In this document: one piece after another, positions 40,174 to 62,000 of the stretch | How the letters are laid out: each line of letters opens with the position of its first letter | Numbering within the stretch: position 1 is the stretch's first letter | IMG/VR virus record: IMGVR_UViG_3300025000_000053 | Coordinates: 185,854-249,853 of that record | Reading direction: 5' to 3' (one strand) | DNA: 64,000 bases | Position numbers and translations under genes: made by a program | The notes under the pieces: model-generated | What the model saw: only the letters and a program-made list of their open reading frames with translations | The model's database searches: none | Told to the model about the DNA's origin: nothing

Positions 40174-40554
40174 ATGTTGAATGATATTATTTCTGTATTC
40201 AATCAGCTTACTCGTAATGAGTTGGCTGATTGTTCATTATTTGAAAATATTATTAATAGACATTATGAAAAATTTAAATATTTTTACTTTATTATAGATA
40301 ATATTAGCTTAAAGAATATAATAGACATTAAATGTCAGGAAGAATCAACACGATTAAATATTTCCATCTCATTTAAAACAAAAAAAGAAAGAGATTTATT
40401 TTTTAATATATTTAATAATAAGATTAATAATAATTGTAATTTTAAATATAAAGATTATTTTATTTTCAAAATTATAAAAGATACTAAATCTATTAATGTA
40501 ACAATAGAAAATAATGATATTATAGTAGAAGAGGTGTTGTATGGATGCAAATAG
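40174..40554 (+). CDS. Hypothetical protein
   Basis: Overlaps the start of the RNAP gene. Confidence 0.5.
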   Translation: MLNDIISVFNQLTRNELADCSLFENIINRHYEKFKYFYFIIDNISLKNIIDIKCQEESTRLNISISFKTKKERDLFFNIFNNKINNNCNFKYKDYFIFKIIKDTKSINVTIENNDIIVEEVLYGCK

Positions 40555-42803
40555 AACTCTTTGATACTAAGAAATTTATCGAAGTGAATAACTTAAGAGA
40601 GGTAACAAATTTAATATTATTTGAAAAAGGAAATATCCCAACTGTTGATGGTTTATTATCAACAGATATATTTGGGGTATCATCTAGAGAAAGAAAAGAA
40701 ACATATGCTTATATTGATTTACACGGACATTTCTTACATCCATTTATATTTAAGACATTAAAACGAATGAATAGAAAATTTGAATCTGCTATATATGGGA
40801 ATATAAATTTTATAATTAAAGATGGTGAATTAGTTGAAGATGAAAACGGAGAAAGTGGAATAGACTTTTTATATAAAAATTGGGAAAAATTTAATTTTGA
40901 ACGAAATAATAGTATGATGCGTAATGAAAGAATTTCTGTTTTAGAATCATATAAAAAAAATGTTTTATTTACTAAGTATTGGATTGTTATGCCAGCTTTT
41001 TTTAGAGATGTGAATTTACAATTTGCAGCTGAAGGAAGAGTATCTCACCATGAGATAAATGATAAATATTCTAAGTTAATTAGGTTTGCTTCTATAATTA
41101 TTAATAACAATTTTGATTTTGTTCTAAATACAACTAAAGCAAAAATTCAAGAAACTCTTGTTGAAATCTACGATTTACTTAAAGGTAAGATAGAAAAGAA
41201 ACAAGGGTTGATTCGTAAATCATTATTAGGTAAATCAATAGATTTTGGCGTTAGGAGTGTAAATTTACAATGCACGTGATTCTTTAATTGTCGGGGAAGC
41301 CCTTTAAATCTCTTACTACCAAACTATAATAGCAATATTATAGTGGCGAAGGGTAATGCCTTAGGTATGGTAACAAGGTAAGAAATTAGGTAATCCGCAG
41401 CTAAGATTCTAATATATTAATATTATTAGAATAAAGTTCAACGACTATCTGATGACGCTACTTTTAGTAGAGTAGGAGTAGACTCACAAGTCAATTAATG
41501 GTGAGTTGAAATGGGAAACCATCAAAAAGATGAAGATATAGTCTAGTATCCTAGTGAAAACTAGGGAAGTTCATTAGAGAACTGCATAGTCTGACGAACT
41601 ATGTGAATACAACGAATTTCTGCACCAATATTCAAAGCGAATAAATCAGAAGATATGAAAGTCGATTTTTATAATTGTGGTATACCATTATCACAATGCT
41701 GTTCATTATGCACACCATATATGATAACTTGGGTGAAAAGATTCTTTCAGAGGGAATTAGAAAGACTTTATATGAAATATCCGGTTAAATTAAAAACAGA
41801 AGAGATTATTTATGTTAAATTAAAATCACCTGAGTTATTTTTTAATGATGAATATATTGAAAAGCAAATTAATAAATTTATTTCTAGTTATGGTGATAGA
41901 TTTGAAAAAATCAAATTACCTATAGATGATCCTAAATATGAAAAAAATATTTATTTAAGTTTTATTGGAAGAGAATTTATTAAAGGTGTTCCAGAAACAG
42001 AATCACCTTTAATACAAAGACCTGCTACATGGTGTGATATTTTATATCAAGCAGCAGTTGAAATTACTTCTGATAAACATGTTTATGTAACACGATATCC
42101 TGTTTTAGATTATTTCGGTACTTTTCCTAATAAAATTCATGTTTTATCAACTCATGAAACTATTCCAATGTTTGTTGGTTCTAGGGTATATGAGCACTAC
42201 CCTAAAATAGATATTAAAATGCCTAAAGAAAAAGTTTCTATTACCTTTGCTGATACAGTAACAATGTCAAACCTGTATTTAACAGGTCTTGGTGGAGACT
42301 ACGATGGTTCTTTAAATGCCCACTTATATGGTGACATATATGTGAATCTTCTTTAATTGTCGGGGAGGCTCTTAGAGCTTTTTATTATATAATAAAAAGA
42401 TTGGGTAATCCGCAGCTAAGATTCTAATATATTAATAATATATTAGAATAAAGTTCAACGACTATCCCTAGGTACTGAAATGTACAACAGGAGTAGGGCT
42501 CAAGTGAGTGGGTGAAAATCCCTTAAATCGAAATAGGAAGCACCTCCTATAAGGTGATGATATAGTCTAGTATCCTAGTGAAAGCTAGGGAAGTTCATAA
42601 GAGAACTGCATAGAATAACGACCTATGTGAATATATCGGATCAAGTATCTTTAAAGGTTTTATTTTCACAAGAAGCTAATCTTGAGGCAGATAGAATTAT
42701 GAAATCAAAAGGTCATATTCTTAATATCTATGGACAAAATATGAGAAAGACAACAAATGAAGGTGCTCATACTTTATTTATGTTAACAAAGTTTAATAAA
42801 TAA
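40545..42803 (+). CDS. rpoC: RNA polymerase beta' N-terminal subunit (probably virion RNAP), spliced from exons 40545-41260, 41615-42308, 42639-42803 (524 aa)
   Basis: GLIRKSLLGKSIDFGVRS-V-ISAP and GGDYDG-DQV are restored only after removing two group I introns. Frames checked; stop codon at 42801-42803. Confidence 0.85.
41261..41614 (+). mobile_element. Group I intron 1 (354 nt, ORF-less)
   Basis: P aattgtcgggga, Q aatccgcagc, R gttcaacgacta, S aagatatagtct. P1 gugu|a pairs with ugcac, giving a U.G pair at the splice site. Terminal G at 41614. Confidence 0.9.
42309..42638 (+). mobile_element. Group I intron 2 (330 nt, ORF-less), inside the catalytic DYDG/D motif
   Basis: P/Q/R/S elements present. 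The exon ends in U (ggt), the intron ends in G, and splicing restores DYDGD. Confidence 0.9.
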
Positions 42804-42808
42804 ATTTA

Positions 42809-42847
42809 AGATATAGATAGAATATATTAGTTTCTATCTATATCTTA
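42809..42847. terminator. Intrinsic terminator after the RNAP gene
   Basis: aagatatagatagaa..ttctatctatatctt; supports the extended gene end at 42803. Confidence 0.65.
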
Positions 42848-43005
42848 TTTATATATTATATAAGAGATATTAACGTTTTAGATATAAATATTAAAATATA
42901 TGTGAATAAATCACATATATTTTTTTTCGTATTTTTAACAATAATAGATATATATTATTTTAGTGTATGAAATTTAAATAATATAAATTTAAGGGGGATT
43001 TTATA

Positions 43006-43329
43006 ATGAAAATAACATTTGATTATTCTATGAGAGAAGCTAATTCCATTAATAATTTAATAACCGAGATTAATAATGTTAACAAAATAGCTGAAACAAA
43101 ACAGGTTGTTTTACCATTTGAAAACAAATATGCTTCATTAACTATCAACAGGGGTGAGAAAGCTATATTGATGATTAATGAAGATTTCTTTATTGATTCT
43201 TTATCATACTTAACAGTTGTTTATAATCGAATTGCACCGCTGGTTTTAGCATGGAAAAACCTTATTAAAGACATAACACCTTTTGGAAAAGAATATTACA
43301 TTAAATGGTTTCAGAAGAAAGATAAATAA
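43006..43329 (+). CDS. Hypothetical early protein
   Basis: SD aaggggg; early motif at 42951. Confidence 0.55.
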   Translation: MKITFDYSMREANSINNLITEINNVNKIAETKQVVLPFENKYASLTINRGEKAILMINEDFFIDSLSYLTVVYNRIAPLVLAWKNLIKDITPFGKEYYIKWFQKKDK

Positions 43330-43914
43330 TTTTCAGTCATTATATTTTAGTTATATTAATGAAGGTGTAATAATCCACCTTTATTTTTTATATACACAGC
43401 TGGCTTACCGCTATTTTTAATTTTATTATCTAATAATGTATAGATACCCACCACCCGTTTCATTAATTGGGAAAAAGAAATGGGGTGATTAAAAAAGATA
43501 ATGTAACAATAAATAGATATATTTATCAAAGATACCGACAATAATTTTAACTCAAATAATTTATATCTTCTATCTTAGTAAAATAACATATAGAAGGGAG
43601 GGATGCCTATATACATGACGATGTATATGGGATAACCTCTAATTATTTATGAGTTTAAATTATTATTAGGTATATGAGTTTATTTATAAAATTCGCCTAC
43701 TAAAATTTCCCCATAGACACACATGTGTATAGGCAATCTATGATGGATGGGGACACTATCGGTTTAGAATACGATGAAGAATAATTTGTTACCTATTTGT
43801 TACAATATAATTAGATAGTGTGATAATATGTGTTTATTTCATTAAATATATATGGTGAATTTATTTATAAAATAGAATAAAGCTCTGTATAAAAACAACA
43901 GAGCTTTATTCTAT

Positions 43915-44262
43915 TTATTTTTTTTCAATAAGATCAGGTATAATTTCTTCTGTTTTTACAGAAGGATTAATAATTTTTTTTCCTTTAAGTTCCTGTTCTT
44001 TATTAATCAAATTAACAGGCTTAGTACTATCATTATAGAAATCAATAGTATTATTAATATTTTCATTATCTTTATCAAAATTAATAGTGGTTAATTTTAC
44101 TTCAGTACCATCTTTAAGTACTTCAACAACATCAACCCCTTGTGTAATCATAGCAAAAATAATAGATGTTTTTTCTGTATATGGTGTTAAAATTGGACCA
44201 TATATTCCACCCTTAGCTCTAATAGGGGTTCTACTGAGAATTTTAATATTTTTAGTTTTCAT
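43915..44262 (-). CDS. Hypothetical protein
   Basis: SD ggaggc; followed by a long hairpin at about 43870-43915. Confidence 0.55.
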   Translation of the reverse strand: MKTKNIKILSRTPIRAKGGIYGPILTPYTEKTSIIFAMITQGVDVVEVLKDGTEVKLTTINFDKDNENINNTIDFYNDSTKPVNLINKEQELKGKKIINPSVKTEEIIPDLIEKK

Positions 44263-44292
44263 AATTTCTCAAGCCTCCATTTTATTCATTTA

Positions 44293-44547
44293 TTAATAAT
44301 TGGTTTCTGGGATAAAATTTTCTTTGATATGTTTTAATTTTTCTTCCATATCCTTTTCCTCATCAAATTCCGGTATTTGCTCAGCAAGTTTTTTAATTTC
44401 AGCATCGTCTTCATCCATTAATAATAGACCACTATCGTCTAAAATGGAATCACGAATATCTCCACTAATACTAGTTTCACTTACAGCTTCTGATAAAAAT
44501 TGTTCTTGTTCATTTCTACGAATAGTTCTTTTAAGACCAGATAACAT
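44293..44547 (-). CDS. Small acidic late protein (scaffold/head-protein-like)
   Basis: Late motif at 44571-44582; FLSE|AVSE|T and IKE|N motifs. Confidence 0.5.
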   Translation of the reverse strand: MLSGLKRTIRRNEQEQFLSEAVSETSISGDIRDSILDDSGLLLMDEDDAEIKKLAEQIPEFDEEKDMEEKLKHIKENFIPETNY

Positions 44548-44592
44548 AATATAAATACCCCCAATCTTTTTATTAAATTGTTTAAATGAAAA

Positions 44593-45795
44593 TTAGTTAT
44601 TCGATACAAATTTATTATAATAAAAGCGAAGAATAAATAGTAATATAGGTATTTTAATAAATGAATTAAATGAATATTCTATAAATTCATATTCTTCTAA
44701 TTGTTCTAAGTTTATATTATAAATAGAATCAATATGTTTATTAAAGTAATCCACCATTAGATTTTCAATAATAAATTCATCACTAAGTTTAATATCTGTT
44801 AATATAGCATTTAAAATATTATCTTCAATATATTCTATACCATCAGTACTAAATACTATTGAATTAACATTATCTAAAAAATATAAGAATATAGAATTAT
44901 GATTTTTAATAATTGTATTACTATATTTAATACTTAGAGGTAAATTCTTTTTATTTTTTTCTAAAAATCTATAAATTGATTTTTCATATTCTATTACAAA
45001 TGTTGAACTATCGTCCTCATTAACTAAACAAATAGTATTAAAGTTATATTTCTCATTAAATAAAATATTGTTATTAATAAAATAATTTAAATATTTATCA
45101 TAAAACTTACTACCAAGTTCATTATTAAACATAAAACAATTATATTTCTTATTAAAAAAAAATATCTTGTACTTATCAGCTATATATCTATAAATCTCAT
45201 TTAATTTAAGTATTTTATAATAATCATCTTCTCGTATTAAACATTTTTCCTGTGTTCCGATATTTCTTAACACACAGTTATATATTTCATTAATTTGATT
45301 ATTTAAATCAGTAACTAATTCACCATAAGCTGATTTTAATGTAAAAGAAATTTTATAATAATTGTTACTTTTTATTGTATCATACTTAACTTCTGTTACC
45401 ATAAATAAATAATTTTTATCTAAATAAGATATAGTAAAAAAATCATTTGGTAAGGGTTTAAGTGTATTAGGTAAAATTATAAGTTCACTATCAAAATTAG
45501 TTGTTAAACCTTCCTCTTCTTCACTTAATTCTAACATAATAGATTCTAGACCATATACAGGAAAATCATTTATCTTTTTAAACTTTAATGGGGAATTTTC
45601 TCCTAGTAAATCCTCAATATTAATAAATCCACTATCTGTAATACTATTAATATTATCAATATTATAATATGTGACAAATGTTGGATTTTTATCTAAAAAT
45701 CTAGAATATTGAGAATTCATTCTTTCTTCGTATTTAAAAATATTTTCATTAATAAAAGTCTTATCATCTATTAAATAACCCAATAAAATCACCAT
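44593..45795 (-). CDS. Virion structural protein (neck/head-tail connector-like)
   Basis: Late operon context; LKPLPNDFF-type beta-barrel pattern. Assignment is tentative. Confidence 0.4.
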   Translation of the reverse strand: MVILLGYLIDDKTFINENIFKYEERMNSQYSRFLDKNPTFVTYYNIDNINSITDSGFINIEDLLGENSPLKFKKINDFPVYGLESIMLELSEEEEGLTTNFDSELIILPNTLKPLPNDFFTISYLDKNYLFMVTEVKYDTIKSNNYYKISFTLKSAYGELVTDLNNQINEIYNCVLRNIGTQEKCLIREDDYYKILKLNEIYRYIADKYKIFFFNKKYNCFMFNNELGSKFYDKYLNYFINNNILFNEKYNFNTICLVNEDDSSTFVIEYEKSIYRFLEKNKKNLPLSIKYSNTIIKNHNSIFLYFLDNVNSIVFSTDGIEYIEDNILNAILTDIKLSDEFIIENLMVDYFNKHIDSIYNINLEQLEEYEFIEYSFNSFIKIPILLFILRFYYNKFVSNN

Positions 45796-45817
45796 CCCCC
45801 TTTATTTATATAATAAT

Positions 45818-46837
45818 TTAACTTCTTTTATATATAGTTATATAAGGTGATGTACTATGTGCTACAACTAGATAAATACTATCTGGTGAGAAAGAACATC
45901 CATTACCAGTACCTGTAGGTAATATATCCGGATCAGATAATTTAGTAAATGTATCTCCACTTCTTTTATATATAGTTATATAAGGTGATGTACTATGTGC
46001 TACAACTAGATAAATAATATCTGGTGAGAAAGAACAACCATAACCAACACCTGTGGGTAATATACTAGGATTAGCCAATTTAGTAAATGTATCACCACTT
46101 CTTTTATATATAGTTATATATGGTGATGTATTATGTGCCACAGCTAGATAATTATTATCTGGTGAGAAAGAACAACCATAACCAACACCTGTGGGTAATA
46201 TATCTGGATCAGGTAATTTAGTAAAAGTATCTCCACTTCTTTTATATATAGTTATATATGGACTATTGTTATGTCCTACAACTAAATAATTATTATCTGG
46301 TGAGAAAAAACAACCATAACCAGTACCTATAGGTAGTACACTAGGATTATCTAATTTAGTAAAAGTATCACCAGATCTTTTATATATAGTTATATATGGA
46401 CTATTTTTATGTGATATAGCTAAATAATTATTATCTGATGAAAAAGAACAATCAAAACCTTGTCCTGTAGGTAATATACTAGGATCAGGTAATTTAGTAA
46501 ATGTATCACCACTTCTTTTATATATAGTTACATATGGTGAAATATAATGTGCTACAGTTAAATAATTATTATCTGGTGAGAAAGAACAACCATAACAATA
46601 CCCTGGAGGTAATACACTTGGATCAGGTAATTTAGTAAAGGTATCACCATCTCTTTTATATATAGTTATATAAGGTGATGTATCATGTCCTACAGCCAAA
46701 TAATTATTATCTGATGAAAAAAAACTTTCATAAGCATTGTTAGTAGGTAATATACTAGGATTATCTAATTTAGTAAATATACCACCAATATTACTATTAT
46801 TTTTAAAACTACTCATTAATATTAAGTTACTTAACAT
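45818..46837 (-). CDS. Seven-bladed beta-propeller repeat protein
   Basis: Seven 46-aa repeats FTKLxDPxILPTGxGYGCSFSPDNNYLxVxHxxSPYITIYKRSGDT. Real start is probably the ATG at 46837 (SD gaaagg; late motif 46865-46876). Confidence 0.85.
   Translation of the reverse strand: MLSNLILMSSFKNNSNIGGIFTKLDNPSILPTNNAYESFFSSDNNYLAVGHDTSPYITIYKRDGDTFTKLPDPSVLPPGYCYGCSFSPDNNYLTVAHYISPYVTIYKRSGDTFTKLPDPSILPTGQGFDCSFSSDNNYLAISHKNSPYITIYKRSGDTFTKLDNPSVLPIGTGYGCFFSPDNNYLVVGHNNSPYITIYKRSGDTFTKLPDPDILPTGVGYGCSFSPDNNYLAVAHNTSPYITIYKRSGDTFTKLANPSILPTGVGYGCSFSPDIIYLVVAHSTSPYITIYKRSGDTFTKLSDPDILPTGTGNGCSFSPDSIYLVVAHSTSPYITIYKRS
45821..46780 (-). repeat. 138-bp tandem coding repeat, 7 copies
   Basis: Period read directly from recurring cttttatatatagtta at about 45963 and 46101, etc. 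Confidence 0.9.
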
Positions 46838-46950
46838 ATTAATCAACCTTTCTTTATAAGTATTTAATATAATGTTGAAAAGTATTAGAAACATAAAAAT
46901 AAATAAATCAGTATGTTAAAATAAAATACATACTGATTTATTTATTAAAT

Positions 46951-47235
46951 CTATTTATTAACTGATTTTATAATTCTTTCTTTAAATTTTTCAATTTGAT
47001 TATTTATACTTATTATTCGTGCTTCCAATAATTTAATATGTTCTCTAGGATCTCTTAATATCCAATTGGATGGAACCCAAATAAATTTTCCCCCCATTAT
47101 GTTTTTTCTTAATTCATCAGGAGCTACCCATTCATCAATATCATCTAAATAAAACCATAAACCTTTTTCTTTAGCCTCTTTAAACATAGGCTCCAAAGAT
47201 TCTAAAATAGCATCCGTACTCATTGAATTAACCAT
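46951..47235 (-). CDS. Small paralog array member 4
   Basis: EAKEKGLWFY..W..P.E..WILRDP..coiled coil. Confidence 0.65.
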   Translation of the reverse strand: MVNSMSTDAILESLEPMFKEAKEKGLWFYLDDIDEWVAPDELRKNIMGGKFIWVPSNWILRDPREHIKLLEARIISINNQIEKFKERIIKSVNK

Positions 47236-47239
47236 TTTT

Positions 47240-47533
47240 TCATCCTCCTTTATTGATATCTTTTTTAATTTTTTCTAAGCGTTTTTCAATATCATCTTTT
47301 TCCGATTCCAGTATTTCAATTAAAGTACTAGGTGAACGTAACAACCATCTAATTGAAGGATTCGAATACATTCCAGAACGATGTACAGCTTCTATCTCAC
47401 CAGGAGTAAACCAATGACCAGTTTCAGTATCATAAAAATACATTTTGTCTTTTTTAGCTTGACCAATCAAAGATTTTGAAATTTCTTTTTTCTTATGTTG
47501 CATATTATACACTTCCTTTTTATAAAAAATCAA
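47240..47533 (-). CDS. Small paralog array member 3
   Basis: QAKKDKMYFY..WFTPGE..WLLRSP. Confidence 0.65.
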   Translation of the reverse strand: MIFYKKEVYNMQHKKKEISKSLIGQAKKDKMYFYDTETGHWFTPGEIEAVHRSGMYSNPSIRWLLRSPSTLIEILESEKDDIEKRLEKIKKDINKGG

Positions 47534-47816
47534 CTATTATTCGTTTATCAGAGGGATTATCAATTAAATCTCTAACATTACTAATTATTTCTTCAATTTT
47601 TATTTTCCTAGATTCTAACCTTTTAATTAATTTTTCAGGTGATTCAAGTCTCCAATTCGTAGATTTAATAAGTTTTCTTTCTATTAAAGATTTAAATTCA
47701 GGTACGTTGTACCAACATCCATTATTAAAACCAACGAACCATAATCCATTTTTTTCAGCATCTTTAATCATTTCATTTAATATTTCTTGATTTTTGTCAT
47801 TTAACATATCAATCAC
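47520..47816 (-). CDS. Small paralog array member 2
   Basis: DAEKNGLWFV..WY..E..WRLESP; early motif at 47844. Confidence 0.65.
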   Translation of the reverse strand: MIDMLNDKNQEILNEMIKDAEKNGLWFVGFNNGCWYNVPEFKSLIERKLIKSTNWRLESPEKLIKRLESRKIKIEEIISNVRDLIDNPSDKRIIVDFL

Positions 47817-47854
47817 CCCTAAAATTTATTATTCATTATTTTAATAATATATAT

Positions 47855-48166
47855 TTAATTTTTTATATAACTTTCAATTTCATTTATCCTTAGTTTTATT
47901 ATTTCTTTTTTGTTATATAAAGAATTAAGTAATTCTATAGGATTACGTAATATCCATTTTGTTTTACACATAATATATTCAATATTATTATAATAATTTA
48001 TTATTTCACTAGGAGTGAAATAAATTTTAAAAAATTCATCATAAAATAATAACTTTTCATTACTAGCTTTATCAATTAAAGGTTCTAATAATTTAAGATA
48101 ATTAATTATTTCATCTTTACTAGAAATAGATTTATTATTAAATAAAATATTTTCATAATTGAACAT
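47855..48166 (-). CDS. Small paralog array member 1
   Basis: KASNEKLLFY..YFTPSE..WILRNP. Confidence 0.6.
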   Translation of the reverse strand: MFNYENILFNNKSISSKDEIINYLKLLEPLIDKASNEKLLFYDEFFKIYFTPSEIINYYNNIEYIMCKTKWILRNPIELLNSLYNKKEIIKLRINEIESYIKN

Positions 48167-48215
48167 ATAATCACCTCTTTATTTTTTTATTATAATTTAT
48201 TATGTTTCTTTGATT

Positions 48216-49247
48216 TCACTTAAATTTAACCTCCTTTTTAATTAAATTAATCTCATTCTTTTTAACACCATAATCTTTTCCTAAAGTATTATAATATAGC
48301 TTTATCTTATTAACGAAAGGACTTAATTCTTCAAATAGATTTTTATAAAACCATGGTTTTTTATCTTTATCTGAAAATATATTAATATCCACATTTCCTA
48401 TTATACCAGATTGAATATAAAATTTTAATACATTAACAAATCCACATCCACATACTGCCGTATATATTTTATTATTTTTTTCTTTATCAAATATATTATA
48501 ATATAAGCCTAAAACATCAAATACACCTTCAGCTATATTAATAGTAATAGTTTTAGGTGTTAATAAATCAATAGTATTAGGAATTGAATAAAACTTCCTA
48601 GTATTATCTAAATTTTTATATATACTGTATTTAAAGTATCTTTTATACTTTCCACTTGTATCTCTAAATACAATATGTTCATTTTTAGCTGATAAAAATC
48701 CCACATATTTGTTATGTAATAAACTAGCTTGTTCTTTATTAGTTGTTATAGTTTTTATATTATTATGTCTAAGAAATTCTCCAAAATTAAATACCACTTT
48801 TAATTTAATAAATTCTTCTTCAGTAATATTAATACCTAGTCTATTTTCAATATATTCTTTCTTCTCTTTTACTAATTCTTTTAATACTGATATTGGAATT
48901 TTAAAATCAAAAATATTATTTTTTATACCTAATTTCTTATTAATTTTTCCTATAGTTTCTTTATTATAAGATAATAATTTACTATTGATTTGTAAATCAT
49001 TAATCCTAAATGTTCTTAATATAGACGGAGTCAATACTCCTGATATATCACATAAGAAACAATGAAATATAATTGGTGTATTTATTTTTAATTCAATTTT
49101 TATAAAGAAATGAGCACTTGTACTGTTTTTTACACTATCACCACAAAAAGGACAACGAATCACTATTTGTGATTCGTTGATATTTTTTGAAGAAGTAACA
49201 TTAAGTAATTTATTTTTTATCTTTAATTTAAAAGAATAGTTGTCCAT
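48216..49247 (-). CDS. DNA primase (Zn-finger + TOPRIM)
   Basis: CPFCGD..CFLC zinc finger; IAEGVFD and FSDKD TOPRIM motifs. Confidence 0.8.
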   Translation of the reverse strand: MDNYSFKLKIKNKLLNVTSSKNINESQIVIRCPFCGDSVKNSTSAHFFIKIELKINTPIIFHCFLCDISGVLTPSILRTFRINDLQINSKLLSYNKETIGKINKKLGIKNNIFDFKIPISVLKELVKEKKEYIENRLGINITEEEFIKLKVVFNFGEFLRHNNIKTITTNKEQASLLHNKYVGFLSAKNEHIVFRDTSGKYKRYFKYSIYKNLDNTRKFYSIPNTIDLLTPKTITINIAEGVFDVLGLYYNIFDKEKNNKIYTAVCGCGFVNVLKFYIQSGIIGNVDINIFSDKDKKPWFYKNLFEELSPFVNKIKLYYNTLGKDYGVKKNEINLIKKEVKFK

Positions 49248-49261
49248 GTTAACATTCCTTT

Positions 49262-50812: not shown

Positions 50813-50904
50813 TAAGGTCTACTATATCTTTTACTAAATTAAAAATCTTATCTATACTTTTATAATATATACTTCATTTTATTTATACTTTATCTGGGTG
50901 GGTA

Positions 50905-51666: not shown

Positions 51667-51752
51667 AAGATAATAACCCCCTGTTAGTAATTTTTAAAAT
51701 CTTATCTAGGAATGGTTGCTATTAGCAACCATTCCTTTAGTAATTATAAAAA

Positions 51753-53432: not shown

Positions 53433-53498
53433 AATTTCCTACCCCCATTTATTTTTAGTCTTTAGAACTATGTTTAACACATAATTATTTTTTAATAT

Positions 53499-54185: not shown

Positions 54186-54256
54186 TTATAATCATCCTTT
54201 ATTTTAAAGTATAAAAAAAGAATATAATGAAAAAATCATTATATTCTTTTAATAAT

Positions 54257-55042
54257 TTACATAAATTGCTCAATGTCATTAATACCTTCTATATTACTGA
54301 TATCTGGTGGTATTTGAGTATTTGAAGATGAATTAGTATTACTATTAGAGAAAATGTTATTTTGTTTTCCATAGCTACGACCTTCAATACCATGTTTCTT
54401 TGCAATACCTTCCAGATACTTCATAGAAGCTTCTCTATATCCTCTATCAGCATATCTAATAGAATGTGCAACCCCATTCGATATAGTATCCCGACTACTT
54501 TTTAGTAATTTCATAAAAGTAAGTAATTCGGAATGAAGACCAGATGTGATTTCAAATGTTCCTTCTTCTTCATTATAATCATCTACTCGATATGATCTGT
54601 TAAATTCATAACATATACTCATTTCGGGCTTTTTCGTTTCCTCATTCAAATTTTTATATATAGCAACATAAGGTCTGTTACTACCAATAGTTTTATTTCC
54701 CGTTGCAATAACAAATAGAGAACTTGCACCAACAGGAACTCCAATAGATTTAATTTTATTTTCTTTAAGAGCAGGAATAAGTATTTCGACAAAATCATTT
54801 AAAAGAATTGTTACTTTTTCCACCGTAAGTGCTGTTGAAACAGTTGTTTCATAATCAAATACTTTCGACTCAGTTTGTTTATTTTTCTCTAAAGCTGGAT
54901 TCATTTTAATAGAAATTAATTCATTCCAAAATCCAAATGATAAAGCAGATGGGTCGAATCCATCCTTATTTCTAAATTGAATACTTTTAGTATTTACATT
55001 AACAACATTTTTTGAATTATTTTGAGAATTATTATTAAACAT
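54257..55042 (-). CDS. Possible ssDNA-binding protein
   Basis: Beta-rich core with a low-complexity, acidic/hydrophobic C-terminal tail; replication context. Confidence 0.35.
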   Translation of the reverse strand: MFNNNSQNNSKNVVNVNTKSIQFRNKDGFDPSALSFGFWNELISIKMNPALEKNKQTESKVFDYETTVSTALTVEKVTILLNDFVEILIPALKENKIKSIGVPVGASSLFVIATGNKTIGSNRPYVAIYKNLNEETKKPEMSICYEFNRSYRVDDYNEEEGTFEITSGLHSELLTFMKLLKSSRDTISNGVAHSIRYADRGYREASMKYLEGIAKKHGIEGRSYGKQNNIFSNSNTNSSSNTQIPPDISNIEGINDIEQFM

Positions 55043-55089
55043 GTTCTAACCTCCAATATTTTTTACTTATAATAAAGTTCACTATGTTT

Positions 55090-55596
55090 TTAATTATTAA
55101 TAATTTCATATACTTTAGAGTATGATTTTTTTTCTTCTGTCAATACAACTTTATTAAATAAAAAATCTTTTTTCATAGTTATACTGCTTAGAATAAAGTG
55201 CTTAAACCATTTACTGTCTTTCGGATGTTCTAATAAGTTTCTAATAATTGAATATATTGAATATTTGTGACCATTTCTATTAGTCCTTTCAAAAGTAAAA
55301 ATACTTTTATCAGAAAAATCTGGATTTTTACCAAAAACTCGATGTATTTCTTTTAGAAATCTTTTTGACCTCTTTTTTAATAATAAAAATTCCCTACGTG
55401 AACAGTTAGAACCTAATATGCTTTTCTTTCGATTACCTTGTAAAACAATAGTTTTAGCTACCTTATAGATAAAATGACAAGTTTTTTCATTGAGTATATT
55501 AAAAAATCCTACTAAACCTTTTGAGAATTTTGTTAAAACCTCTTTAAGATTATTAGTAGCTTTAACTAATATTTCACTATCAATATTTAAATTCAT
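55090..55596 (-). CDS. Basic hypothetical protein, tandem paralog B
   Basis: MNLNIDSEILVKATNNLKEVL..KKRSKRFLKEIH. Confidence 0.6.
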   Translation of the reverse strand: MNLNIDSEILVKATNNLKEVLTKFSKGLVGFFNILNEKTCHFIYKVAKTIVLQGNRKKSILGSNCSRREFLLLKKRSKRFLKEIHRVFGKNPDFSDKSIFTFERTNRNGHKYSIYSIIRNLLEHPKDSKWFKHFILSSITMKKDFLFNKVVLTEEKKSYSKVYEIINN

Positions 55597-55617
55597 TAAT
55601 TTTTCCTCCTTATATTT

Positions 55618-56055
55618 TTAATTAGTTTTAGGATGATCAAATTCACCATACCAGATGTTATTAAATTTTTCTATATTATTTTTTAATCTATTTATACCAT
55701 AACACCTATTATTCCTATTTAACCATGTAAGATTCCCGTCTAAAAAAGATGGATGTTTCCCATATACCTTATGGATAAATTTTAAAAATCTCTTAGCTCG
55801 TTTTTTCATTAATAAAAATTTTTTACGAGAATGAAATTTTCCACAAAATCCAAATTTGCGATTATGTTTTATTATTTTAATAGCCATATTATAGTAAAAT
55901 CTTAAAGTTAAATCAGATTTTCTAATAAAAAAAGCATTATGAAAATTCATTAATTTTTCAGTAAAATCACAAAATGAATATTTTAGTTTTAATAAAACCT
56001 CTTTAAGATTATTAATAGCTTTAACTAATATTTCACTATCAATATTTAAATTCAT
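55618..56055 (-). CDS. Basic hypothetical protein, tandem paralog A
   Basis: MNLNIDSEILVKAINNLKEVL..KKRAKRFLKFIH. Confidence 0.6.
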   Translation of the reverse strand: MNLNIDSEILVKAINNLKEVLLKLKYSFCDFTEKLMNFHNAFFIRKSDLTLRFYYNMAIKIIKHNRKFGFCGKFHSRKKFLLMKKRAKRFLKFIHKVYGKHPSFLDGNLTWLNRNNRCYGINRLKNNIEKFNNIWYGEFDHPKTN

Positions 56056-56069
56056 TAATTTTCACCCCC

Positions 56070-58351
56070 TTATATTTTTAGAATATTACTATAGTAATCA
56101 TCTTCAGTTGTCTTAATAATTCCAATACCCAAACTATCTAATACACCATGGAACGTAGATAAATTATTATTTATAATTGTACTATAATCAATAAAAGGAA
56201 TTATCCAATTTGGTATCTTAGGTATATTTCTAGGCAAAGCTATAACTTTAACTCCTTTCTCTCTTATTTTCTTATCACTATTATTATATATATTTTCAAT
56301 TATCCTTTCATATATTTCAGGCTCAGATTGTTTTATTTTTTCAATAGAGTTTTCATCCATATTAACCTTAATAATATCAATGTGTTCAGGTAGTTCTATT
56401 GAATTATCAGGATAAGCATAATTCCATGCTAAAACAGCACGGACACCCATTTCTCTTAATGGATCTTTATATGCTTCTAATTCTTTTACTGATTTAGGAA
56501 TTAGAAAATCTTTTTGACCTGATTCTAGAGATATTCTAATTATATTTTCTAATTTTTCTAATTCTTTTAAAACATTAGATATATTAATTTCTTCAGTTGA
56601 TAATAAATGTTCTTTAATAAGATTTTTAAAGAATTTTTCTGTTGCTTCTCTTGTTGATGACTTAACAAAATCTAACGTAGTGTTCACATAGGTCGTTAAT
56701 CTATGCAGTTCTCTTATGAACTTCCCTAAGTTTCCCTAGGATACCAGACTATATCTTCATCCTTATTATATAACTAATAAGGAGCCTCCCATTTCGATTT
56801 AAGGGATTTTCACCCACTCACTTGAGCCCTACTCCTATTGATCATTTCAGATCCAAAGGGATAGTCGTTGAACCTTTCTCTTATATTAGAGACTTGGCTG
56901 CTGATTACCCAATATTTTAGTTTATTACCTTTATCTTAAGGTACTAAAATCTATAAGGATTTTCCAGCAGTTAAAGAGGTTTTCTTTATATATTACTATA
57001 TAAAGGAGCAATATTTATTACCCTTAATATCAACTTTTTCAGGATATATTTCATCTCCTTCTCTTAATCTAACACTACTTATATATCTTTTCTTTTTCTG
57101 TGTTAAAATAAGTCTAGTGAATAAAAATTCATTTTTCATATTTATTTTATGTCTATATCTTTTAGGTATATTTACATCTTTAGTATATTTCTTCAATGTA
57201 TTAGTAACCATATTAGTTATTATATAAGCCAATAAGTTGATAGAAATAAATTTTAATTCAGTTTTATCCTTATTTATTAATTTATCATTAACATCGATAA
57301 TATTATATTTAATAAATTTAACCCATTTATCAATAGTCATAATAGTTGAATCTGTATCTGAACCAACTACAGTTTTTCTTTCATCATATTTTAATCTACG
57401 AATCCTATTATATGGAGAAAAATTAAAGAAAACAAATTCTTTATATAGTTTCCATAATAGTTCTAAATCATCTTTTACGTTATTAGGTATCTTATTAGGA
57501 TTTTTAAATGTATCAATATTTTCTATAATATATGATAATAAGTTTCTTATTTTTCTTAATTTTGAAAATTCAAAAATGTTATTCTTATAGTAAATTCTAT
57601 TAATATCTTTTTGACTTAAAGATAATAAATAATTTAAAATAAAAGAATTATACTCTTTTTTATAATTAAAAAATCTTTTCTTTAAATATTTCATTAATTG
57701 TTTTGAACTAATATTTTCTAAAAAATTATCATTTAAATTTCTTTTTTCCTTAATTACATTAGTTAAAAAAAACACACATTCTTCAAGATTATTAAATGGA
57801 GCATTATTTTCTAAAAAAGTTTCAAAAGCCATTTCAGCTGTAGCTATTAATGATTGGCCGGAGTTTGTAATAGAACTGGCGGTGTATAAATTATAAAAAT
57901 TAGATGTTGGGGCTCCGTTGGACCCGAAGAACGAGTTTGCGTTGGTTTTCTCAGAACCTTGTAACCTATCAAATGTCCCATATTCATAATCATCTTTTGA
58001 ATATTTTTTTAATTGATTTTTATACTCTTTTCTTAACGACATAAAGTTTTCTAGCATAACAGCGGCTGGATTCAATGATTCATCTTGATTTTTAAAAAAT
58101 ACTCCGAATCCAGCAACTATAGGTTTAGTTTTTTTAACCCAATCATATACTGATATTAAATCTACATTAATAGATTTATGAATATAGTTATTATGAATTA
58201 TAGCTTTAGGGTTAATTAAGTTTTTATCTATAATATCATCTAAAACTTTTGATATATCTTTATTTGTTAGTTCAGGATACATTCTTTTAAATATCTCTAT
58301 ATTACTTTCTTTCCAATCTTTTATAAATAAACTTTTAATTTTTTTAGATAT
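56070..58351 (-). CDS. polB: Family B DNA polymerase, C-terminal polypeptide of a split enzyme; exons 58351(or 58282)-57020 and 56675-56070
   Basis: EKTNANSFFG (motif B), GSDTDS (motif C), KKRY, and DIKG-LDFVKSST restored after splicing. Motif A (DxxSLYP) is absent. Confidence 0.85.
56676..57019 (-). mobile_element. Group I intron 3 (344 nt, ORF-less) in the DNA polymerase gene
   Basis: On the minus strand: P aactgctggaaa, Q aatcagcagc, R gttcaacgacta, S aagatatagtct. The exon ends ggt and the intron ends in G; frame restored. Confidence 0.9.
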
Positions 58352-58435
58352 TGTATTTACCTCCTAACATAAAGTTTTTTAGTATAGAATTAATATTTTG
58401 TTATCCAATTTGTTAATTTTTATTTTAATTCAAAA

Positions 58436-58942
58436 ATGCCTATAGAACAATTAATTAAAAAAATGGCATTGAAAGGTTGTGTTGTTATGTTATTCAATAA
58501 GAATGGAAAACAAGATAATTATACTGAAGATTTAACTCCGGATTCATTATCTTTAATTACTGAATGTATGTTAAAAGATGAATTGAGTAAAGAAGAGTTG
58601 GAAGCTTTTTTAGAAGATTCATCTGAAATTAATTCGGCTATGAAAGATGAAGTGTTACTTGAAAAAACTATTGTTAGAATGGATAAGTATGCAAAATTAA
58701 ATAGGGGTCAGAAAATAGCAGTATTTACTATTGCTAGAGAAAAAAAAGACCCCAAGTTTAAGAAACTATTAACTATTTGGAGAATTGAAAGATTTTTGGA
58801 AGCCGAACTTATGAAAAAATATGGTAATGAAGGTATGCGTCGTGCCAAAGCAGCTATGAATAAAAGTAGAACATCAACCTCTAAAATTGTTAAAACAGTT
58901 GCTAATAAAGTTCATAATCAATTTAACACTGGAATTAAATAA
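58436..58942 (+). CDS. Late protein with acidic propeptide-like N-terminus and basic C-terminus
   Basis: Late motif at 58446-58457; likely ATG at about 58487; LITE and VLLE|K motifs. Confidence 0.55.
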   Translation: MPIEQLIKKMALKGCVVMLFNKNGKQDNYTEDLTPDSLSLITECMLKDELSKEELEAFLEDSSEINSAMKDEVLLEKTIVRMDKYAKLNRGQKIAVFTIAREKKDPKFKKLLTIWRIERFLEAELMKKYGNEGMRRAKAAMNKSRTSTSKIVKTVANKVHNQFNTGIK

Positions 58943-58945
58943 TTT

Positions 58946-58981
58946 AAATAATACTAGATGGATATCCATCTAGTATTATTT
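58946..58981. terminator. 36-bp perfect palindrome (terminator candidate)
   Basis: aaataatactagatggat|atccatctagtattattt. Confidence 0.7.
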
Positions 58982-59064
58982 TTTATTCTATGTTCCATGC
59001 CTTAAAATATATATTATTAATACATGAAAAACAAATAAATAATTTAAACTAAAGAAAGGGTGTT

Positions 59065-62000
59065 ATGTTATTGGAAAATAATATAAAAGAAATTATTGGT
59101 TTATTAAGTAACAAAGTATTTATTATTTCAGAAATAATGGAAACTAGAAAAACTTTTAATGAGAATCTAGAGACAATTTATGATTATTTAAAACAAGGTT
59201 TTGAAATTAAAGAATTAAGAACATGTCCAACTTACTTTAGATTTAAAGAAGATGGTTATATACACACTTTACAATTAAGACATTTTCTTACCAACTTGAT
59301 GTTTTGGGAACCATTAATGAGATTTGATTGTTCAGATAAGTTAGATGAAACTTATATTGTTGATTGTACTAAAATGTCATCTAAATTAATTAAAAATTAT
59401 ATTGATAATAAAATTGTTATACCTTATAGAAGAATAATCGAAAATAAGAAAATGAATAAAGTTATTCATGATATGATTTATAATCTATCAAGAATATCAA
59501 CAGATTTTAATATTATATTAGGATTGTCTATTAATGTTGAGACATTTATTGATGTTGCAAAAAGAAATCCAAGATTTAATGAGATTATTAGGACTCAATT
59601 AAATGAAGATATGCAACCAACTGAGATTGAGGAATATTTAGATAAATTGATGCATGAACAAATAGAAATCTTAAAAAATGATGATAAAGATAATTTATTA
59701 AAACCAATACTTAAATCAGGTGCTGGTATTAAAAGTAAACAATTGTCAGAATTCTCAATATCTGGCGGGTTAAAAATTAGCCCCGTACATAGGCGACTAT
59801 GTGCGTAAACCTCTTTAATTGCTGGGACTCTCTTAAAATATTCTTCTACCAGAATATTAATAAAAGTTGGTGTTGATATTGAAGCTAGTTAATATCGATT
59901 ATGATAAAAAGAAGAAGTTATATATAGTTACCTTTTTTAAAAATAAGGGTGGTTATAAAATAAGAACTAAAAGATTTACTTATTCTGAAGATAGTCATGG
60001 ACCTTTCGCTAGGATTCTTGCTTTACATACAATGAAGACAGGTGAGAGACTTTATCATTGGTTTGTGACTGACGGTATATATACATCTATTTTTATATAT
60101 AATAAAAAATATGGTTTTAGACGTATGTTAATCGATAATGAATTTATTGACATCGTCAAAAATCATAGGATTAATATAATTAAAAATAAAACTGGTCAGA
60201 ATATATTTTATGCGACAATAAAAATAAACGGTAAGAATGTCCCTGTACATCGTCTTATTATGGGTCTAGGAGAATATAGAAATGATCCTGTAGATCATGT
60301 ATTTCATGATTCTTTAGATAATATGAAATTAAATCTACGTGTCTGTACTCCTAGTATTAATAATAGGAATTCAAGATTACGATGTGACAGTAAAACTGGT
60401 ATACAGGGAGTTTGTTTTAATAAAAATAAATGCTCGTATACCGCAGAAGTTAGAGATTTTAATGGTAGAAAAATTAGAAAAAGCTTTCCCATAAAACTTT
60501 ATGGTGAAAATAAAGCCATTGAATTAGCAAAACAATGGCGTGAAATTATGGTAGAAGAATATTATGAGAGACAATCAGCAGCGAAGCCTGATTATTAGTC
60601 AGGAACGTTCAACGACTATCCAAAGCATGTTCATTATTGATATAAAATATAATGAACATAAGCGAGTAGAGTAGGACTAGAAGCTAATGCTAGTTCCAAA
60701 CGGGAGGCATCTCACTGAGATGATGATATAGTCTAGTATCCTAAAGTGATTTAGGGAAGTTCATAAGAGAACTGTATAGGGGTTGCGTCCTATATGAATG
60801 ATCGTAAAACCAAATATTTCTGGTACTACTATCCCTATACCTATTAATAGTAATTATATCGTAGGTGGATTGAGGAATATAACTAATTATTATATAGATT
60901 CTCTCGGTGGTCGCAAATCATTGATTATGAGTAAGCTTGAGATGGGAAATTCTGGGCATTTCGCACGTACTGTGATGCTATTAGTTTCCAGTATTAATTT
61001 ATCTAAAACAGTCGAATCATGTAATACTGTACATCCAATAAAAATTGAATTAACAACTAAAGACCATTTAATAAGAATGCGGGGTAGATATTATCGAACC
61101 ATGTATTCTAGAAATTATCAATTATTAAAAGGTGATGAATATAATTTAATAGGGGAAACTATTTTTGTTAAATCACCAGTTACTTGTGCTTGTAAAGATG
61201 GGATATGTAAAATGTGTTATGGTGAATTATCATATATAAATAATGATATTTCAATAGGTGTATATGCTGGTACAAAAATCACAGAACCAGTTTCACAAAA
61301 TATTTTATCCTCTAAACATTTATTAACAACTAAATCAGAAAAAATACAATTTAATGAAGAATTCTATAGATTTTTTAATATAAGTGGTAATGAAATAATT
61401 ATTAATCCAAATGATGATTTAGATAATTTAGATGATTATAGTTTACTTATAATTAAAAGTAATATTAAAACAATAGCTGATTATGATGATAATGATATGG
61501 AATTTAATGAATATGTAAATCTATTCCATGTATATAATAAGAAAACTAATGAGATGATAGAAATAAAAGAAAGTAGAGATAAAGATTTATATATCTCTCC
61601 TGAATTAAGAAAATTATTTAAGAAAAAAAGTAAAAAGGAAGTTTATGAAATTGATTTTAAAAATATTGATGATGATAGAATTTTTGTTATAGAAGTAGTT
61701 AATAATGAGTTAACCCGTCCACTATATGATATTATGCGTTTAATTGATAGGGTTGACTATAGAATCATACATTGGAACTGTGTTACAATTGATCAAATGT
61801 GTCAAAAGATGTTAGATTTAATAATAGAGTCTGAAATTAATTCTGACTCTGTTCATGGTGAATTAATTTTAACACCATTATTAAGAGATAAAGATGATAT
61901 ATTAGAAAGACCTAAATTTAATAAGTACTTTAATGGTGATGAAGGATACCAAATTCTAACAGTTAAATCTGCTTTAGAAAAACATCCATCAGTATTAGTT

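What the first reader, a model, noticed from the sequence alone, without database searches (positions are those of the whole stretch)
41261..60804. A family of four related group I introns, all in polymerase genes
Seen: introns at 41261-41614, 42309-42638, 56676-57019 (minus) and 59771-60804. All end in almost the same tail, TAGTCT(A/G)GTATCCTA..TAGGGAAGTTCAT(A/T)AGAGAACTG(C/T)ATAG..CTAT(G/A)TGAA..CG. Each has an exon-terminal U and an intron-terminal G, and each restores a conserved motif in frame. Three are ORF-less. Inference: one lineage spread within this genome to unrelated sites (reverse splicing or a shared endonuclease), making transcription and replication dependent on splicing.
Basis: partly seen in the sequence, partly recalled or inferred. 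Interest (0 to 1): 0.75.

Follow-up and report, generated by a model that had tools for sequence, protein, structure and literature searches.

The report
Four phage group I introns confirmed

Summary
All four introns exist at exactly the stated coordinates. Rfam's group I model scores I1 at 57, I2 at 76 and I3 at 88 bits. I4 scores only 38 bits because a 243-aa HNH-AP2 homing-endonuclease gene sits in its P5 loop; without that ORF it aligns colinearly with I3. Each junction is confirmed by intron-less DNA. A diverged second copy in the same record is continuous across the I3 and I4 sites. Intron-free relatives in IMG/VR are continuous across the I1 (RS[V]ISAP) and I2 (DYDG|DQV) sites. Host genes are virion-RNAP beta'-N (two introns), family-B DNA polymerase and non-virion-RNAP beta'-C.

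The record holds about 20 group I introns, 18 of them with the tail. Others interrupt terminase, a virion structural protein, a helicase-like ATPase and other RNAP pieces. The tail core also occurs in AR9, MarsHill and phage K introns and in at least 90 IMG/VR stretches. AR9 has 18 Rfam hits, and one 218-kb relative has none.

Thirteen of 17 insertion sites end in GGT| or CCT|, matching two shared guide-sequence classes. This favours guide-sequence-limited spread over a shared endonuclease. No RNA data exist. Verdict: confirmed, a new member of a known kind.

The parts
40545..41260 (+). Gene A exon 1: virion-type RNAP beta' N-terminal subunit, ending ...GVRS V(gt|)
   Evidence: PHROG 2986, E 2e-52. 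tblastn finds AR9 g145 (virion RNAP beta'-N) and MarsHill 'viral RNA polymerase beta-prime' at 38-41% identity.
41261..41614 (+). Intron I1: group I, 354 nt, ORF-less, no P2, long P5 extension. Phase 2, inside the Val codon of the RSVI motif.
   Evidence: RF00028, 57.1 bits. P1 GUGUA/UGCAC has U41260.G. Intron-less homologues read RS[V]ISAP. AR9 is continuous across this site.
41615..42308 (+). Gene A exon 2, ending ...GLGGDYDG
   Evidence: PHROG 2986, E 2e-26. 23 IMG/VR relatives were found with it.
42309..42638 (+). Intron I2: group I, 330 nt, ORF-less. Phase 0, between Gly and the third Asp of the catalytic DYDGD (NADFDGD) motif.
   Evidence: RF00028, 76.4 bits. Intron-less homologues read DYDG|DQV. 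The same site is occupied in AR9 g145. P1 is only GGU/GCC.
42639..42803 (+). Gene A exon 3: 54 codons plus the stop
   Evidence: Translation. It is contiguous with exon 2 in intron-less relatives.
57020..58282 (-). Gene B exon 1: family-B DNA polymerase catalytic subunit, ending ...VDIKG
   Evidence: Pfam PF20286 (E 4e-24) and PF00136 (E 1e-12). 33% identical to AR9 g152.
56676..57019 (-). Intron I3: group I, 344 nt, ORF-less, phase 0
   Evidence: RF00028, 87.9 bits. The intron-less allele in the same record is continuous at exactly 57020|56675. An intron-less DNA joint 56675->57020 is present in source-sample contigs.
56070..56675 (-). Gene B exon 2, starting LDFVKSST...
   Evidence: Pfam PF20286, E 6e-15.
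59065..59770 (+). Gene C exon 1: non-virion-type RNAP beta' C-terminal subunit, ending ...FSISGG(t|)
   Evidence: It is in frame with exon 2. The gene is the orthologue of AR9 g154.
59771..60804 (+). Intron I4: group I, 1034 nt, phase 1, with an ORF in the P5 loop
   Evidence: The 3' half scores 38.2 bits on RF00028. Without the ORF it is colinear with I3. The second copy of the gene is continuous across 59770|60805. P1 GGGUUAA/UUAGCCC has U59770.G.
59867..60598 (+). Homing-endonuclease gene inside I4: HNH-AP2 type, 243 aa. Its last ~13 codons overlap P4'/P6 of the ribozyme.
   Evidence: Pfam AP2, E 1e-9. 33% identity, E 5e-32, over its full length to AR9 g190 'HNH homing endonuclease, AP2 domain', itself intron-encoded in the AR9 vRNAP beta gene.
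60805..62102 (+). Gene C exon 2, starting (L)KPNISGTTIPIP...
   Evidence: Pfam Rpb1 domain 5, E 1.6e-6. tblastn finds AR9 g154 (non-virion RNAP beta'-C) at 31% identity.
60904..60905 (+). Empty site where the sister strain carries a different HEG-bearing intron (NUMOD4+HNH_3), 100 nt downstream of the I4 site
   Evidence: Copy 1 has its intron at genome 17521-18694, and the alignment of the two copies breaks at window 60904.
42401..64000 (.). Part of the window that has a colinear copy at 80-89% identity at the start of the record (record 1-21181)
   Evidence: blastn within the record. Record 1-2528 is 100% identical to another IMG/VR contig, L035.

Best explanation
The four elements are self-splicing group I introns of the IA2-like phage type, with a P7.1/P7.2 insert and a P9-P9.1-P9.2 tail. 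They lie in a roughly 228-kb, 24.5% G+C jumbo phage from groundwater that is distantly related to AR9.

Where they sit:
- The virion RNAP beta'-N gene, twice: in the RSVI motif and in the catalytic DYDG|D motif.
- The family-B DNA polymerase, at KG|LDFV.
- The non-virion RNAP beta'-C gene, at SGG|LKP.

How they work (established group I chemistry, inferred here): the 5' exon's last U pairs with a G of the internal guide sequence in P1. Guanosine attacks there, and the freed exon then attacks after the terminal G, restoring the reading frame. Without splicing each protein is truncated.

The introns belong to a family of about 20 in this genome and are mobile in the population. Co-occurring sister strains and relatives differ in whether each site is occupied.
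- I4 carries its own HNH-AP2 homing endonuclease and most likely moves by homing.
- The ORF-less I1-I3 most likely persist and move between co-infecting relatives by recombination at the same sites.
- The family most likely reached unrelated genes by integration limited by guide-sequence pairing. Reverse splicing, or a selection filter for a G/C-rich P1, would both act at ...GGU| or ...CCU| sites.

Shown: identity as group I introns, exact borders, host genes, polymorphism, and the site signature. Inferred: actual splicing, endonuclease activity, and the route of spread.
For: Group I identity:
- RF00028 scores of 57-88 bits for I1-I3. I4 is colinear with I3 once its ORF is removed.
- In an alignment of 12 ORF-less copies, RNAalifold gives 63 pairs, 27 of them with compensatory changes, covering P2, P3, P4, P5, P6, the two hairpins between P7 and P3', P9, P9.1 and P9.2.
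- P7 (GACUAU/AUAGUC) is invariant in 12 of 12 copies, and P8 covaries.
- P1 with a U.G wobble forms at each 5' splice site.

Borders: intron-less alleles and homologues confirm all four.

Host genes.

Endonuclease.

Family size and distribution:
- 19 copies of the P7 motif and 18 tails in the record, 12 Rfam hits over the cut-off, plus two divergent introns.
- Counts in other records: relative G001 has 0 hits, G003 has 8, G002 has 14 and AR9 has 18.

Site signature:
- 13 of 17 sites end NGGT| or NCCT|, against 4.3% expected (P 3.5e-15). 14 of 17 are in phase 0.
- There are two guide-sequence classes. 'uuagcccc' is shared by the introns in terminase, two RNAP beta pieces and I4. 'uguggggc' is shared by three others. 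Their flanks have nothing else in common.

Precedent: introns in RNAP, DNA polymerase and terminase genes of AR9 and MarsHill-like phages.
Against: - There is no RNA evidence. Only DNA runs of a groundwater metagenome hold the sequence. The joints seen there are DNA alleles, not spliced RNA.
- P1 of I2 is only 3 bp (GGU/GCC, -1.1 kcal/mol, no better than shuffles). Rfam's alignment prefers a register 1 nt downstream, but that register would destroy the catalytic Asp.
- The tree of 3' cores is mostly unresolved. AR9 introns nest within the polytomy, so this genome's copies are not shown to form a single clade.
- The GGU|/CCU| signature could come purely from selection for a stable P1 in a 24.5% G+C genome, not from the integration mechanism.
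- Pfam detects the AP2 domain in the I4 ORF but no HNH domain.
Confidence: 0.85

Rival explanations
1. The introns are old, vertically inherited residents of AR9-like phage polymerase genes. Their similarity reflects a conserved ribozyme scaffold, not recent movement in this genome.
For: The I2 site (DYDG|D) is occupied in AR9 g145 and in relatives down to 37% protein identity. The tail core is conserved in AR9, MarsHill, phage K and IPLA-C1C introns. AR9 itself has 18 RF00028 hits.
Against: - A complete 218-kb relative with direct terminal repeats, 72% identical in gene A, has no group I intron at all.
- The I3 and I4 sites are empty in a sister strain only ~13% diverged, present in the same samples.
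- The I1 site is occupied only in close relatives and is empty in AR9.
- The intron at the I2 site of the sister strain is closer (90%) to an intron in another gene than to I2 (82%).
Confidence: 0.08
2. One shared, trans-acting homing endonuclease (intron-encoded or free-standing) cut all the unrelated sites and seeded the ORF-less introns there.
For: At least four introns in the record carry endonuclease genes: HNH-AP2 in I4, and NUMOD4+HNH_3 in three others.
Against: - The 17 insertion sites share no sequence beyond the 3-4 nt GGT| or CCT|. Homing endonucleases need targets longer than 14 bp (plus general knowledge).
- The shared nucleotides are exactly those that pair with the intron's own guide sequence.
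- The window ORFs next to I1-I3 that were scanned show no endonuclease domain.
Confidence: 0.05
3. The elements are decayed relics that no longer splice, and the interrupted genes are pseudogenes or are expressed as separate fragments.
For: No RNA data exist. P1 of I2 is weak. Jumbo-phage RNAP subunits are naturally split into several polypeptides.
Against: - Cores are intact. P7 is invariant and 27 pairs covary across copies.
- Exons stay open and in frame on both sides, and are 55-94% identical to those of relatives.
- The breaks fall inside catalytic motifs such as DYDG|D. Fragments broken there could not function separately.
Confidence: 0.02

Closest known systems
Group I introns of Bacillus jumbo phage AR9/PBS1 (Lavysh et al. 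2016, as cited in bioRxiv 10.1101/2020.12.14.422802)
   Same: - Same phage type, with two multisubunit RNAPs and the same local gene order beta'-N, DNA polymerase, beta'-C.
- AR9 g145 (virion RNAP beta'-N) has an intron at the same DYDG|D site as I2.
- AR9 g189 (vRNAP beta) is joined from 6 pieces and holds an HNH-AP2 endonuclease 33% identical to the I4 ORF.
- AR9 introns are ~70-72% identical to I3.
- AR9 has 18 RF00028 hits genome-wide.
   Different: - The proteins are only 31-38% identical to AR9's.
- AR9's DNA polymerase catalytic subunit and nvRNAP beta'-C are uninterrupted, and its beta'-N is continuous at the I1 site.
- AR9's intron at the I2 site carries a Hef-like endonuclease, whereas I2 is ORF-less.
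[quoted passage not shown]
   Same: Introns lie in RNAP subunits, DNA polymerase and terminase, with intron content varying between close relatives. The MarsHill vRNAP beta intron is 76% identical to part of I3.
   Different: Fewer Rfam hits (5) in MarsHill. The host and the insertion sites differ.
Twort/K-like Staphylococcus phage introns (e.g. the lysK intron of phage K) and the SPO1/SP82 DNA polymerase intron with I-HmuI
   Same: Same ribozyme subfamily: 79% identity over 140 nt of I3 to the phage K lysin intron, with the same GTTCATAAGAGAAC element. Multiple similar ORF-less introns in Twort, and HNH nicking endonucleases in SPO1/SP82, are established precedents (own knowledge; references listed).
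   Different: Those phages carry 1-5 introns, not ~20, and in different host genes.
PhiPA3 vRNAP intron endonuclease gp210 (Science 2024, PMC11620839) and the Jug gut phages with 18.5 group I introns per genome (Sci Adv 2026, PMC12880540)
   Same: An intron-borne endonuclease sits in a jumbo-phage RNAP gene. Dozens of group I introns interrupt essential genes of huge phages, partly validated by metatranscriptomes.
   Different: Unrelated phage lineages. Jug introns are short (~206 nt). No competition phenotype was tested here.

Membership tests
Group I intron (Rfam RF00028) | Covariance-model score at or above the gathering threshold of 50 bits | tested here: met
   I1 57.1, I2 76.4 and I3 87.9 bits. 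I4 alone scores 38.2 bits, for its 3' half only, because of the 730-nt ORF insert. With the ORF removed it aligns colinearly with I3.
Group I intron (Rfam RF00028) | 5' exon ends in U paired to a G of the internal guide sequence (P1); intron ends in G | tested here: met
   T at 41260, 42308, 57020(-) and 59770. G at 41614, 42638, 56676(-) and 60804. The minimum-free-energy hairpins place a U.G pair at each site. The I2 helix is only 3 bp.
Group I intron (Rfam RF00028) | Conserved catalytic core (P3-P8 and P4-P6 domains, with P7 as the guanosine-binding helix) maintained by covariation | tested here: met
   27 of 63 consensus pairs have compensatory changes in 12 copies. P7 is invariant in 12 of 12 and P8 covaries.
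Group I intron (Rfam RF00028) | Precise excision restores a functional reading frame | tested here: met
   Intron-less alleles and homologues are continuous at all four junctions.
Group I intron (Rfam RF00028) | Guanosine-dependent self-splicing of the RNA | not testable with these tools
   No RNA run holds the sequence. This needs RT-PCR or in-vitro splicing.
Subgroup IA2-like phage introns | Extra helices P7.1/P7.2 between P7 and P3' | tested here: met
   Two hairpins are predicted between the P7 5' strand and P3' (alignment columns 243-290 and 297-320), the first with covarying pairs. Subgroup-specific models were not available, so the assignment rests on this and on similarity to AR9 and phage K introns.
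Mobile (homing) intron | Presence/absence polymorphism at the same site among close relatives | tested here: met
   The I3 and I4 sites are empty in a sister strain about 87% identical in DNA. The I1 and I2 sites are empty in several relatives. A relative with 0 introns exists.
Mobile (homing) intron | Intron-encoded site-specific endonuclease | tested here: inconclusive
   Only I4 has an ORF. It has an AP2 domain and is homologous to AR9's annotated HNH-AP2 endonuclease, but no Pfam HNH model matches it at E<=1. I1-I3 have none. Activity was not tested.

The most novel reading that the evidence does not exclude
A single ORF-less ribozyme lineage multiplied inside this phage lineage by guide-sequence-directed integration (reverse splicing), not by endonuclease homing. 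Two guide-sequence alleles, GCCC(C) and GGGG, each seeded several unrelated essential genes at GGU| or CCU| codon ends. The copies then exchanged modules by recombination.

This would make the genome a natural record of group I intron retro-transposition in a virus. The mutually exclusive HEG-bearing introns 100 nt apart in the nvRNAP beta'-C gene of two co-occurring strains might also act in strain competition.
Probability: 0.25. Interest if true: 0.55.

Novelty: new member of a known kind. Interest (0 to 1): 0.3.

Why it matters
For annotation, the three polymerase genes in the window must be joined across these introns or they will be mis-called as fragments.

Biologically the case is ordinary for AR9-like jumbo phages. 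It does offer a clean natural data set: about 20 related introns, a sister strain with reciprocal occupancy, and an intron-free relative. Together with a strong insertion-site signature (GGU|/CCU| matching two guide-sequence classes), this could be used to test how ORF-less group I introns reach new sites in viruses.

Tried and rejected
- The whole-window Rfam scan at gathering threshold missed I3, an 88-bit hit found only when a 6-kb stretch was searched. Motif counts and the whole-genome search were used for the census instead.
- Alternative register for I2. Rfam's P1 alignment puts the U.G pair 1 nt downstream (42309). Rejected because the only frame-preserving partner junction gives DYDGY and loses the catalytic Asp, while all intron-less homologues read DYDG|DQV.
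- RNA evidence. The look-up of sequencing runs returned only DNA runs from groundwater. Read laying gave DNA alleles, not splicing.
- Phylogeny of the 3' cores (37 sequences, 209 columns). It is mostly a polytomy, so it neither shows nor rejects a single clade for this genome's copies.
- A custom covariance model of the full intron was not built, because the size limit on calibration (~190 positions) is below the ~330-nt core. Structural counts were made in a script rather than by sending a 482-character structure string.
- The weak RF00028 hit at genome 142929-143221 (17.7 bits) did not reappear at E<=0.01 and was not counted.
- Free-standing endonuclease genes near I1-I3: none were detected by Pfam in the neighbouring ORFs tested.
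- The architecture at genome 177373-178137 (tandem introns or a twintron) was left unresolved.

Full report
**Observation**

Rfam's group I model (RF00028, gathering score 50 bits) matches as follows:
- I1 at 41199-41566, 57.1 bits, and I2 at 42299-42590, 76.4 bits.
- I3 at 56724-57029 on the minus strand, 87.9 bits. This appeared only when a 6-kb stretch was searched, because the fast filters of the whole-window scan had dropped it.
- The 3' half of I4, 38.2 bits.

I4 scores low because it carries a 243-codon ORF. With intron nucleotides 97-783 removed it aligns colinearly with I3 through P1, P2, P3, P4, P4', P6, P7, P3', P8, P7', P9 and the tail, at 63.5% identity. The shared tail is visible in alignments A1 and A2. 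All four have T before the 5' splice site and G as the last intron base. In each case the minimum-free-energy fold of the first ~30 nt is a P1 hairpin with that U in a U.G wobble. For I2 this hairpin is only GGU/GCC.

**Exact borders**

The 249,853-bp virus record containing the window (window = record 185854-249853) carries a second copy of window 42401-64000 at its start. That copy (record 1-21181) is colinear and 80-89% identical.
- I3: in the second copy the DNA polymerase gene is continuous exactly where I3 is predicted to leave...GATATTAAGGGT|TTAGATTTTGTTAA....
- I4: the beta'-C gene of the second copy is continuous across the I4 junction...GGCGGGT|TAAAACC....
- I1 and I2: 23 related IMG/VR loci were fetched with exon 2. 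Four of them (72%, 72%, 63% and 42% amino-acid identity) have an uninterrupted gene whose translation reads RS[V]ISAP and DYDG|DQV at the two junctions.
- Logan contigs of the source groundwater runs also contain the intron-less joints 56675->57020 and 59775->60821. These are DNA alleles, not spliced RNA.

Rfam's P1 alignment for I2 favours a register one base downstream. That register would turn DYDGD into DYDGY and is rejected.

**Host genes**
- Gene A (40545-42803, three exons) is the orthologue of AR9 g145, the N-terminal beta' piece of the virion RNAP, and of MarsHill's 'viral RNA polymerase beta-prime'.
- Gene B (58282-56070, minus strand) is a family-B DNA polymerase catalytic subunit (Pfam PF20286 and PF00136; AR9 g152).
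- Gene C (59065-62102) matches AR9 g154, the C-terminal beta' piece of the non-virion RNAP.
- The local gene order beta'-N, DNA polymerase, beta'-C is the same as in AR9.
- Unspliced transcripts meet in-frame stops at 41277, 42354, 56998 and 59806. Synthesis of all three enzymes must therefore depend on splicing. From published AR9 biology, the virion RNAP is injected, so early transcription of a given infection would not need new splicing; production of non-virion RNAP, DNA polymerase and progeny virion RNAP would.

**The I4 ORF**

ORF 59867-60598 has an AP2 domain (E 1e-9). It is 33% identical (E 5e-32) over its full length to AR9 g190, annotated as an HNH-AP2 homing endonuclease and itself located in an intron of the AR9 vRNAP beta gene. 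No Pfam HNH model matches it. It sits in the P5 loop, and its last ~13 codons run through P4' and P6.

**The family is much larger than four**

The P7 5' motif GTTCAACGACTATC occurs 19 times and the tail 21-mer 18 times in the record. RF00028 gives 12 hits over the cut-off and more below it. Two further, more divergent group I introns lack the tail, at genome 82541-82882 and 177368-177713. Allowing for the duplicated end, that is about 18 occupied sites per genome equivalent.

By splice-site reconstruction and family scans, the other hosts are:
- the large terminase;
- a virion structural protein;
- a DnaB/RecA-like ATPase, with two introns separated by a 15-nt exon;
- the exonuclease part of DNA polymerase;
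- several RNAP beta and beta' pieces.

'All in polymerase genes' therefore holds only inside the window. Three other introns carry NUMOD4+HNH_3 endonuclease genes unrelated to the I4 ORF.

**Are the ribozymes functional?**

In an alignment of the 12 ORF-less copies, RNAalifold finds 63 pairs, 27 of them with compensatory double changes. These cover P2, P3, P4, P5, P6, two hairpins between P7 and P3' (the P7.1/P7.2 mark of IA2-type introns), P9, P9.1 and P9.2. P7 (GACUAU/AUAGUC), which RNAalifold cannot draw because it crosses P3, is invariant in 12 of 12 copies, and P8 covaries. This pattern is expected of active ribozymes. There is no RNA evidence: only DNA runs of a groundwater metagenome hold the sequence.

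**Is it one lineage that spread in this genome?**

Only partly shown.

Against a simple reading:
- The tail core GTTCATAAGAGAAC is also present in AR9, MarsHill, phage K and IPLA-C1C introns.
- I3 is 70-79% identical to introns of AR9/PBS1 and of many Staphylococcus phages.
- The I2 site is also occupied in AR9 g145 and in relatives down to 37% identity.
- A tree of 37 3' cores is mostly a polytomy with the AR9 introns inside it.

For recent activity:
- Intron load among related records is 0 (a complete 218-kb genome with terminal repeats, 72% identical in gene A), 8, 14 and about 20.
- The I3 and I4 sites are empty in a sister strain present in the same samples.
- That sister strain has a different endonuclease-bearing intron 100 nt downstream, at a site empty in the window (60904|60905).
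- The sister strain's intron at the I2 site is closer (90%) to an intron in another gene than to I2 (82%).
- Copies are mosaic. For I2 the nearest relative is g92375 in P3-P5 (96%), I1 in P6 (85%), I3 in P7.1-P3' (88%) and the terminase intron in the tail (91%). This suggests recombination among copies.

**Route of spread**
- Thirteen of 17 reconstructed insertion sites end in NGGT| or NCCT|, against 4.3% expected (P 3.5e-15). Eight end in GGGT| or CCCT|, against 0.6% expected.
- 14 of 17 sites are in phase 0 (46% expected), and 11 of those 14 follow a GGT or CCT codon (8% expected).
- Introns at unrelated GGGU| sites share the guide context uuagcccc (terminase, two beta pieces, I4). Those at CCCU| sites share uguggggc.
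- The exon flanks share nothing else.

A site-specific endonuclease common to all sites is therefore unlikely. Integration limited by guide-sequence pairing (reverse splicing), or survival only where a G/C-rich P1 can form in a 24.5% G+C genome, both fit. The data cannot separate these two.

**Comparison with what is known**

Multiple group I introns in RNAP subunit, DNA polymerase and terminase genes, with content varying between close relatives, are described for AR9 and the MarsHill-like Staphylococcus jumbo phages. AR9 has 18 RF00028 hits, and its vRNAP beta gene is annotated as six joined pieces. Jug gut phages average 18.5 group I introns per genome. An intron endonuclease in a jumbo-phage RNAP gene mediates competition in PhiPA3. 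The present case is a new, distant member of this known kind: 31-41% protein identity to cultured relatives. New occupied sites relative to AR9 are I1, I3 and I4.

**Caveat on the record**

Record 1-2528 is 100% identical to another IMG/VR contig, whose upstream sequence is only 86% identical to the window strain. Exact and ~12%-diverged contigs co-occur in the source runs at different depths. The record is therefore most likely a wrap-around assembly that merges two co-occurring strains, with a true genome of about 228 kb. This does not affect the window's introns. It means that the 'second copy' is a sister-strain allele, not a paralogue.

Noticed in passing
window 42401-64000 versus record 1-21181: The last 21.6 kb of the record (in the window) repeats its first 21.2 kb at only 80-89% identity. 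Record 1-2528 is 100% identical to contig IMGVR_UViG_3300025010_000040. The record most likely merges two co-occurring strains by wrap-around assembly, and the true genome is about 228 kb.
   Followed up: yes
window 60904|60905 (empty site); record 17521-18694 (occupied in the sister strain): The two strains carry mutually exclusive endonuclease-bearing introns 100 nt apart in the nvRNAP beta'-C gene: HNH-AP2 in the window strain, NUMOD4+HNH_3 in the other. This is reminiscent of competing intron endonucleases in SPO1/SP82.
   Followed up: partly
17 intron sites genome-wide, including window 41260, 42308, 57020 and 59770: There is an insertion-site signature. 13 of 17 5' exons end in GGT| or CCT| (P ~3.5e-15), and 14 of 17 sites are in phase 0. 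The sites match two shared guide-sequence classes (uuagcccc and uguggggc), with no other flank similarity.
   Followed up: partly
record 84999-85717 (minus strand), outside the window: Two family introns in a DnaB/RecA-like ATPase gene are separated by a 15-nt mini-exon, GGTGGGAATGCACCT (GGNAP).
   Followed up: partly
record 177373-178137, outside the window: A divergent group I intron is followed within ~30 nt by a family intron in an RNAP beta-like gene. This is either tandem introns with a mini-exon of 29 nt or less, or a twintron with the second intron inserted in the first one's 3' tail. Not resolved.
   Followed up: partly
IMGVR_UViG_3300009430_000004 (locus L038; 218,088 bp, direct terminal repeats): A complete relative, 72% identical in gene A, has no RF00028 hit at all. 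It is a natural intron-free reference for every site of this phage group.
   Followed up: partly
window 56660-57003 in source metagenome contigs: Summed contig depth over the I3 core is 877-1726, against 30-80 in the flanking exons. The intron family is therefore highly repeated across the phage community of these groundwater samples.
   Followed up: no
window 56724-57029: The whole-window Rfam scan at gathering threshold missed an 88-bit group I hit, which a 6-kb scan found. Filter loss matters in this 24.5% G+C sequence.
   Followed up: yes
alignment A2 (12 ORF-less introns): Copies are mosaic. The nearest relative of I2 and I3 changes from one structural module to the next (P2, P3-P5, P6, P7.1-7.2, P8, tail), which suggests recombination among intron copies. 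I1 lacks P2.
   Followed up: partly
window 15512-18895: Consecutive ~355-aa ORFs on the plus strand are weak paralogues: 15512 versus 16622 at 30% identity (E 3e-11), and 15512 versus 17816 at E 7e-4. Function not examined. No tRNA genes were found in the window.
   Followed up: no
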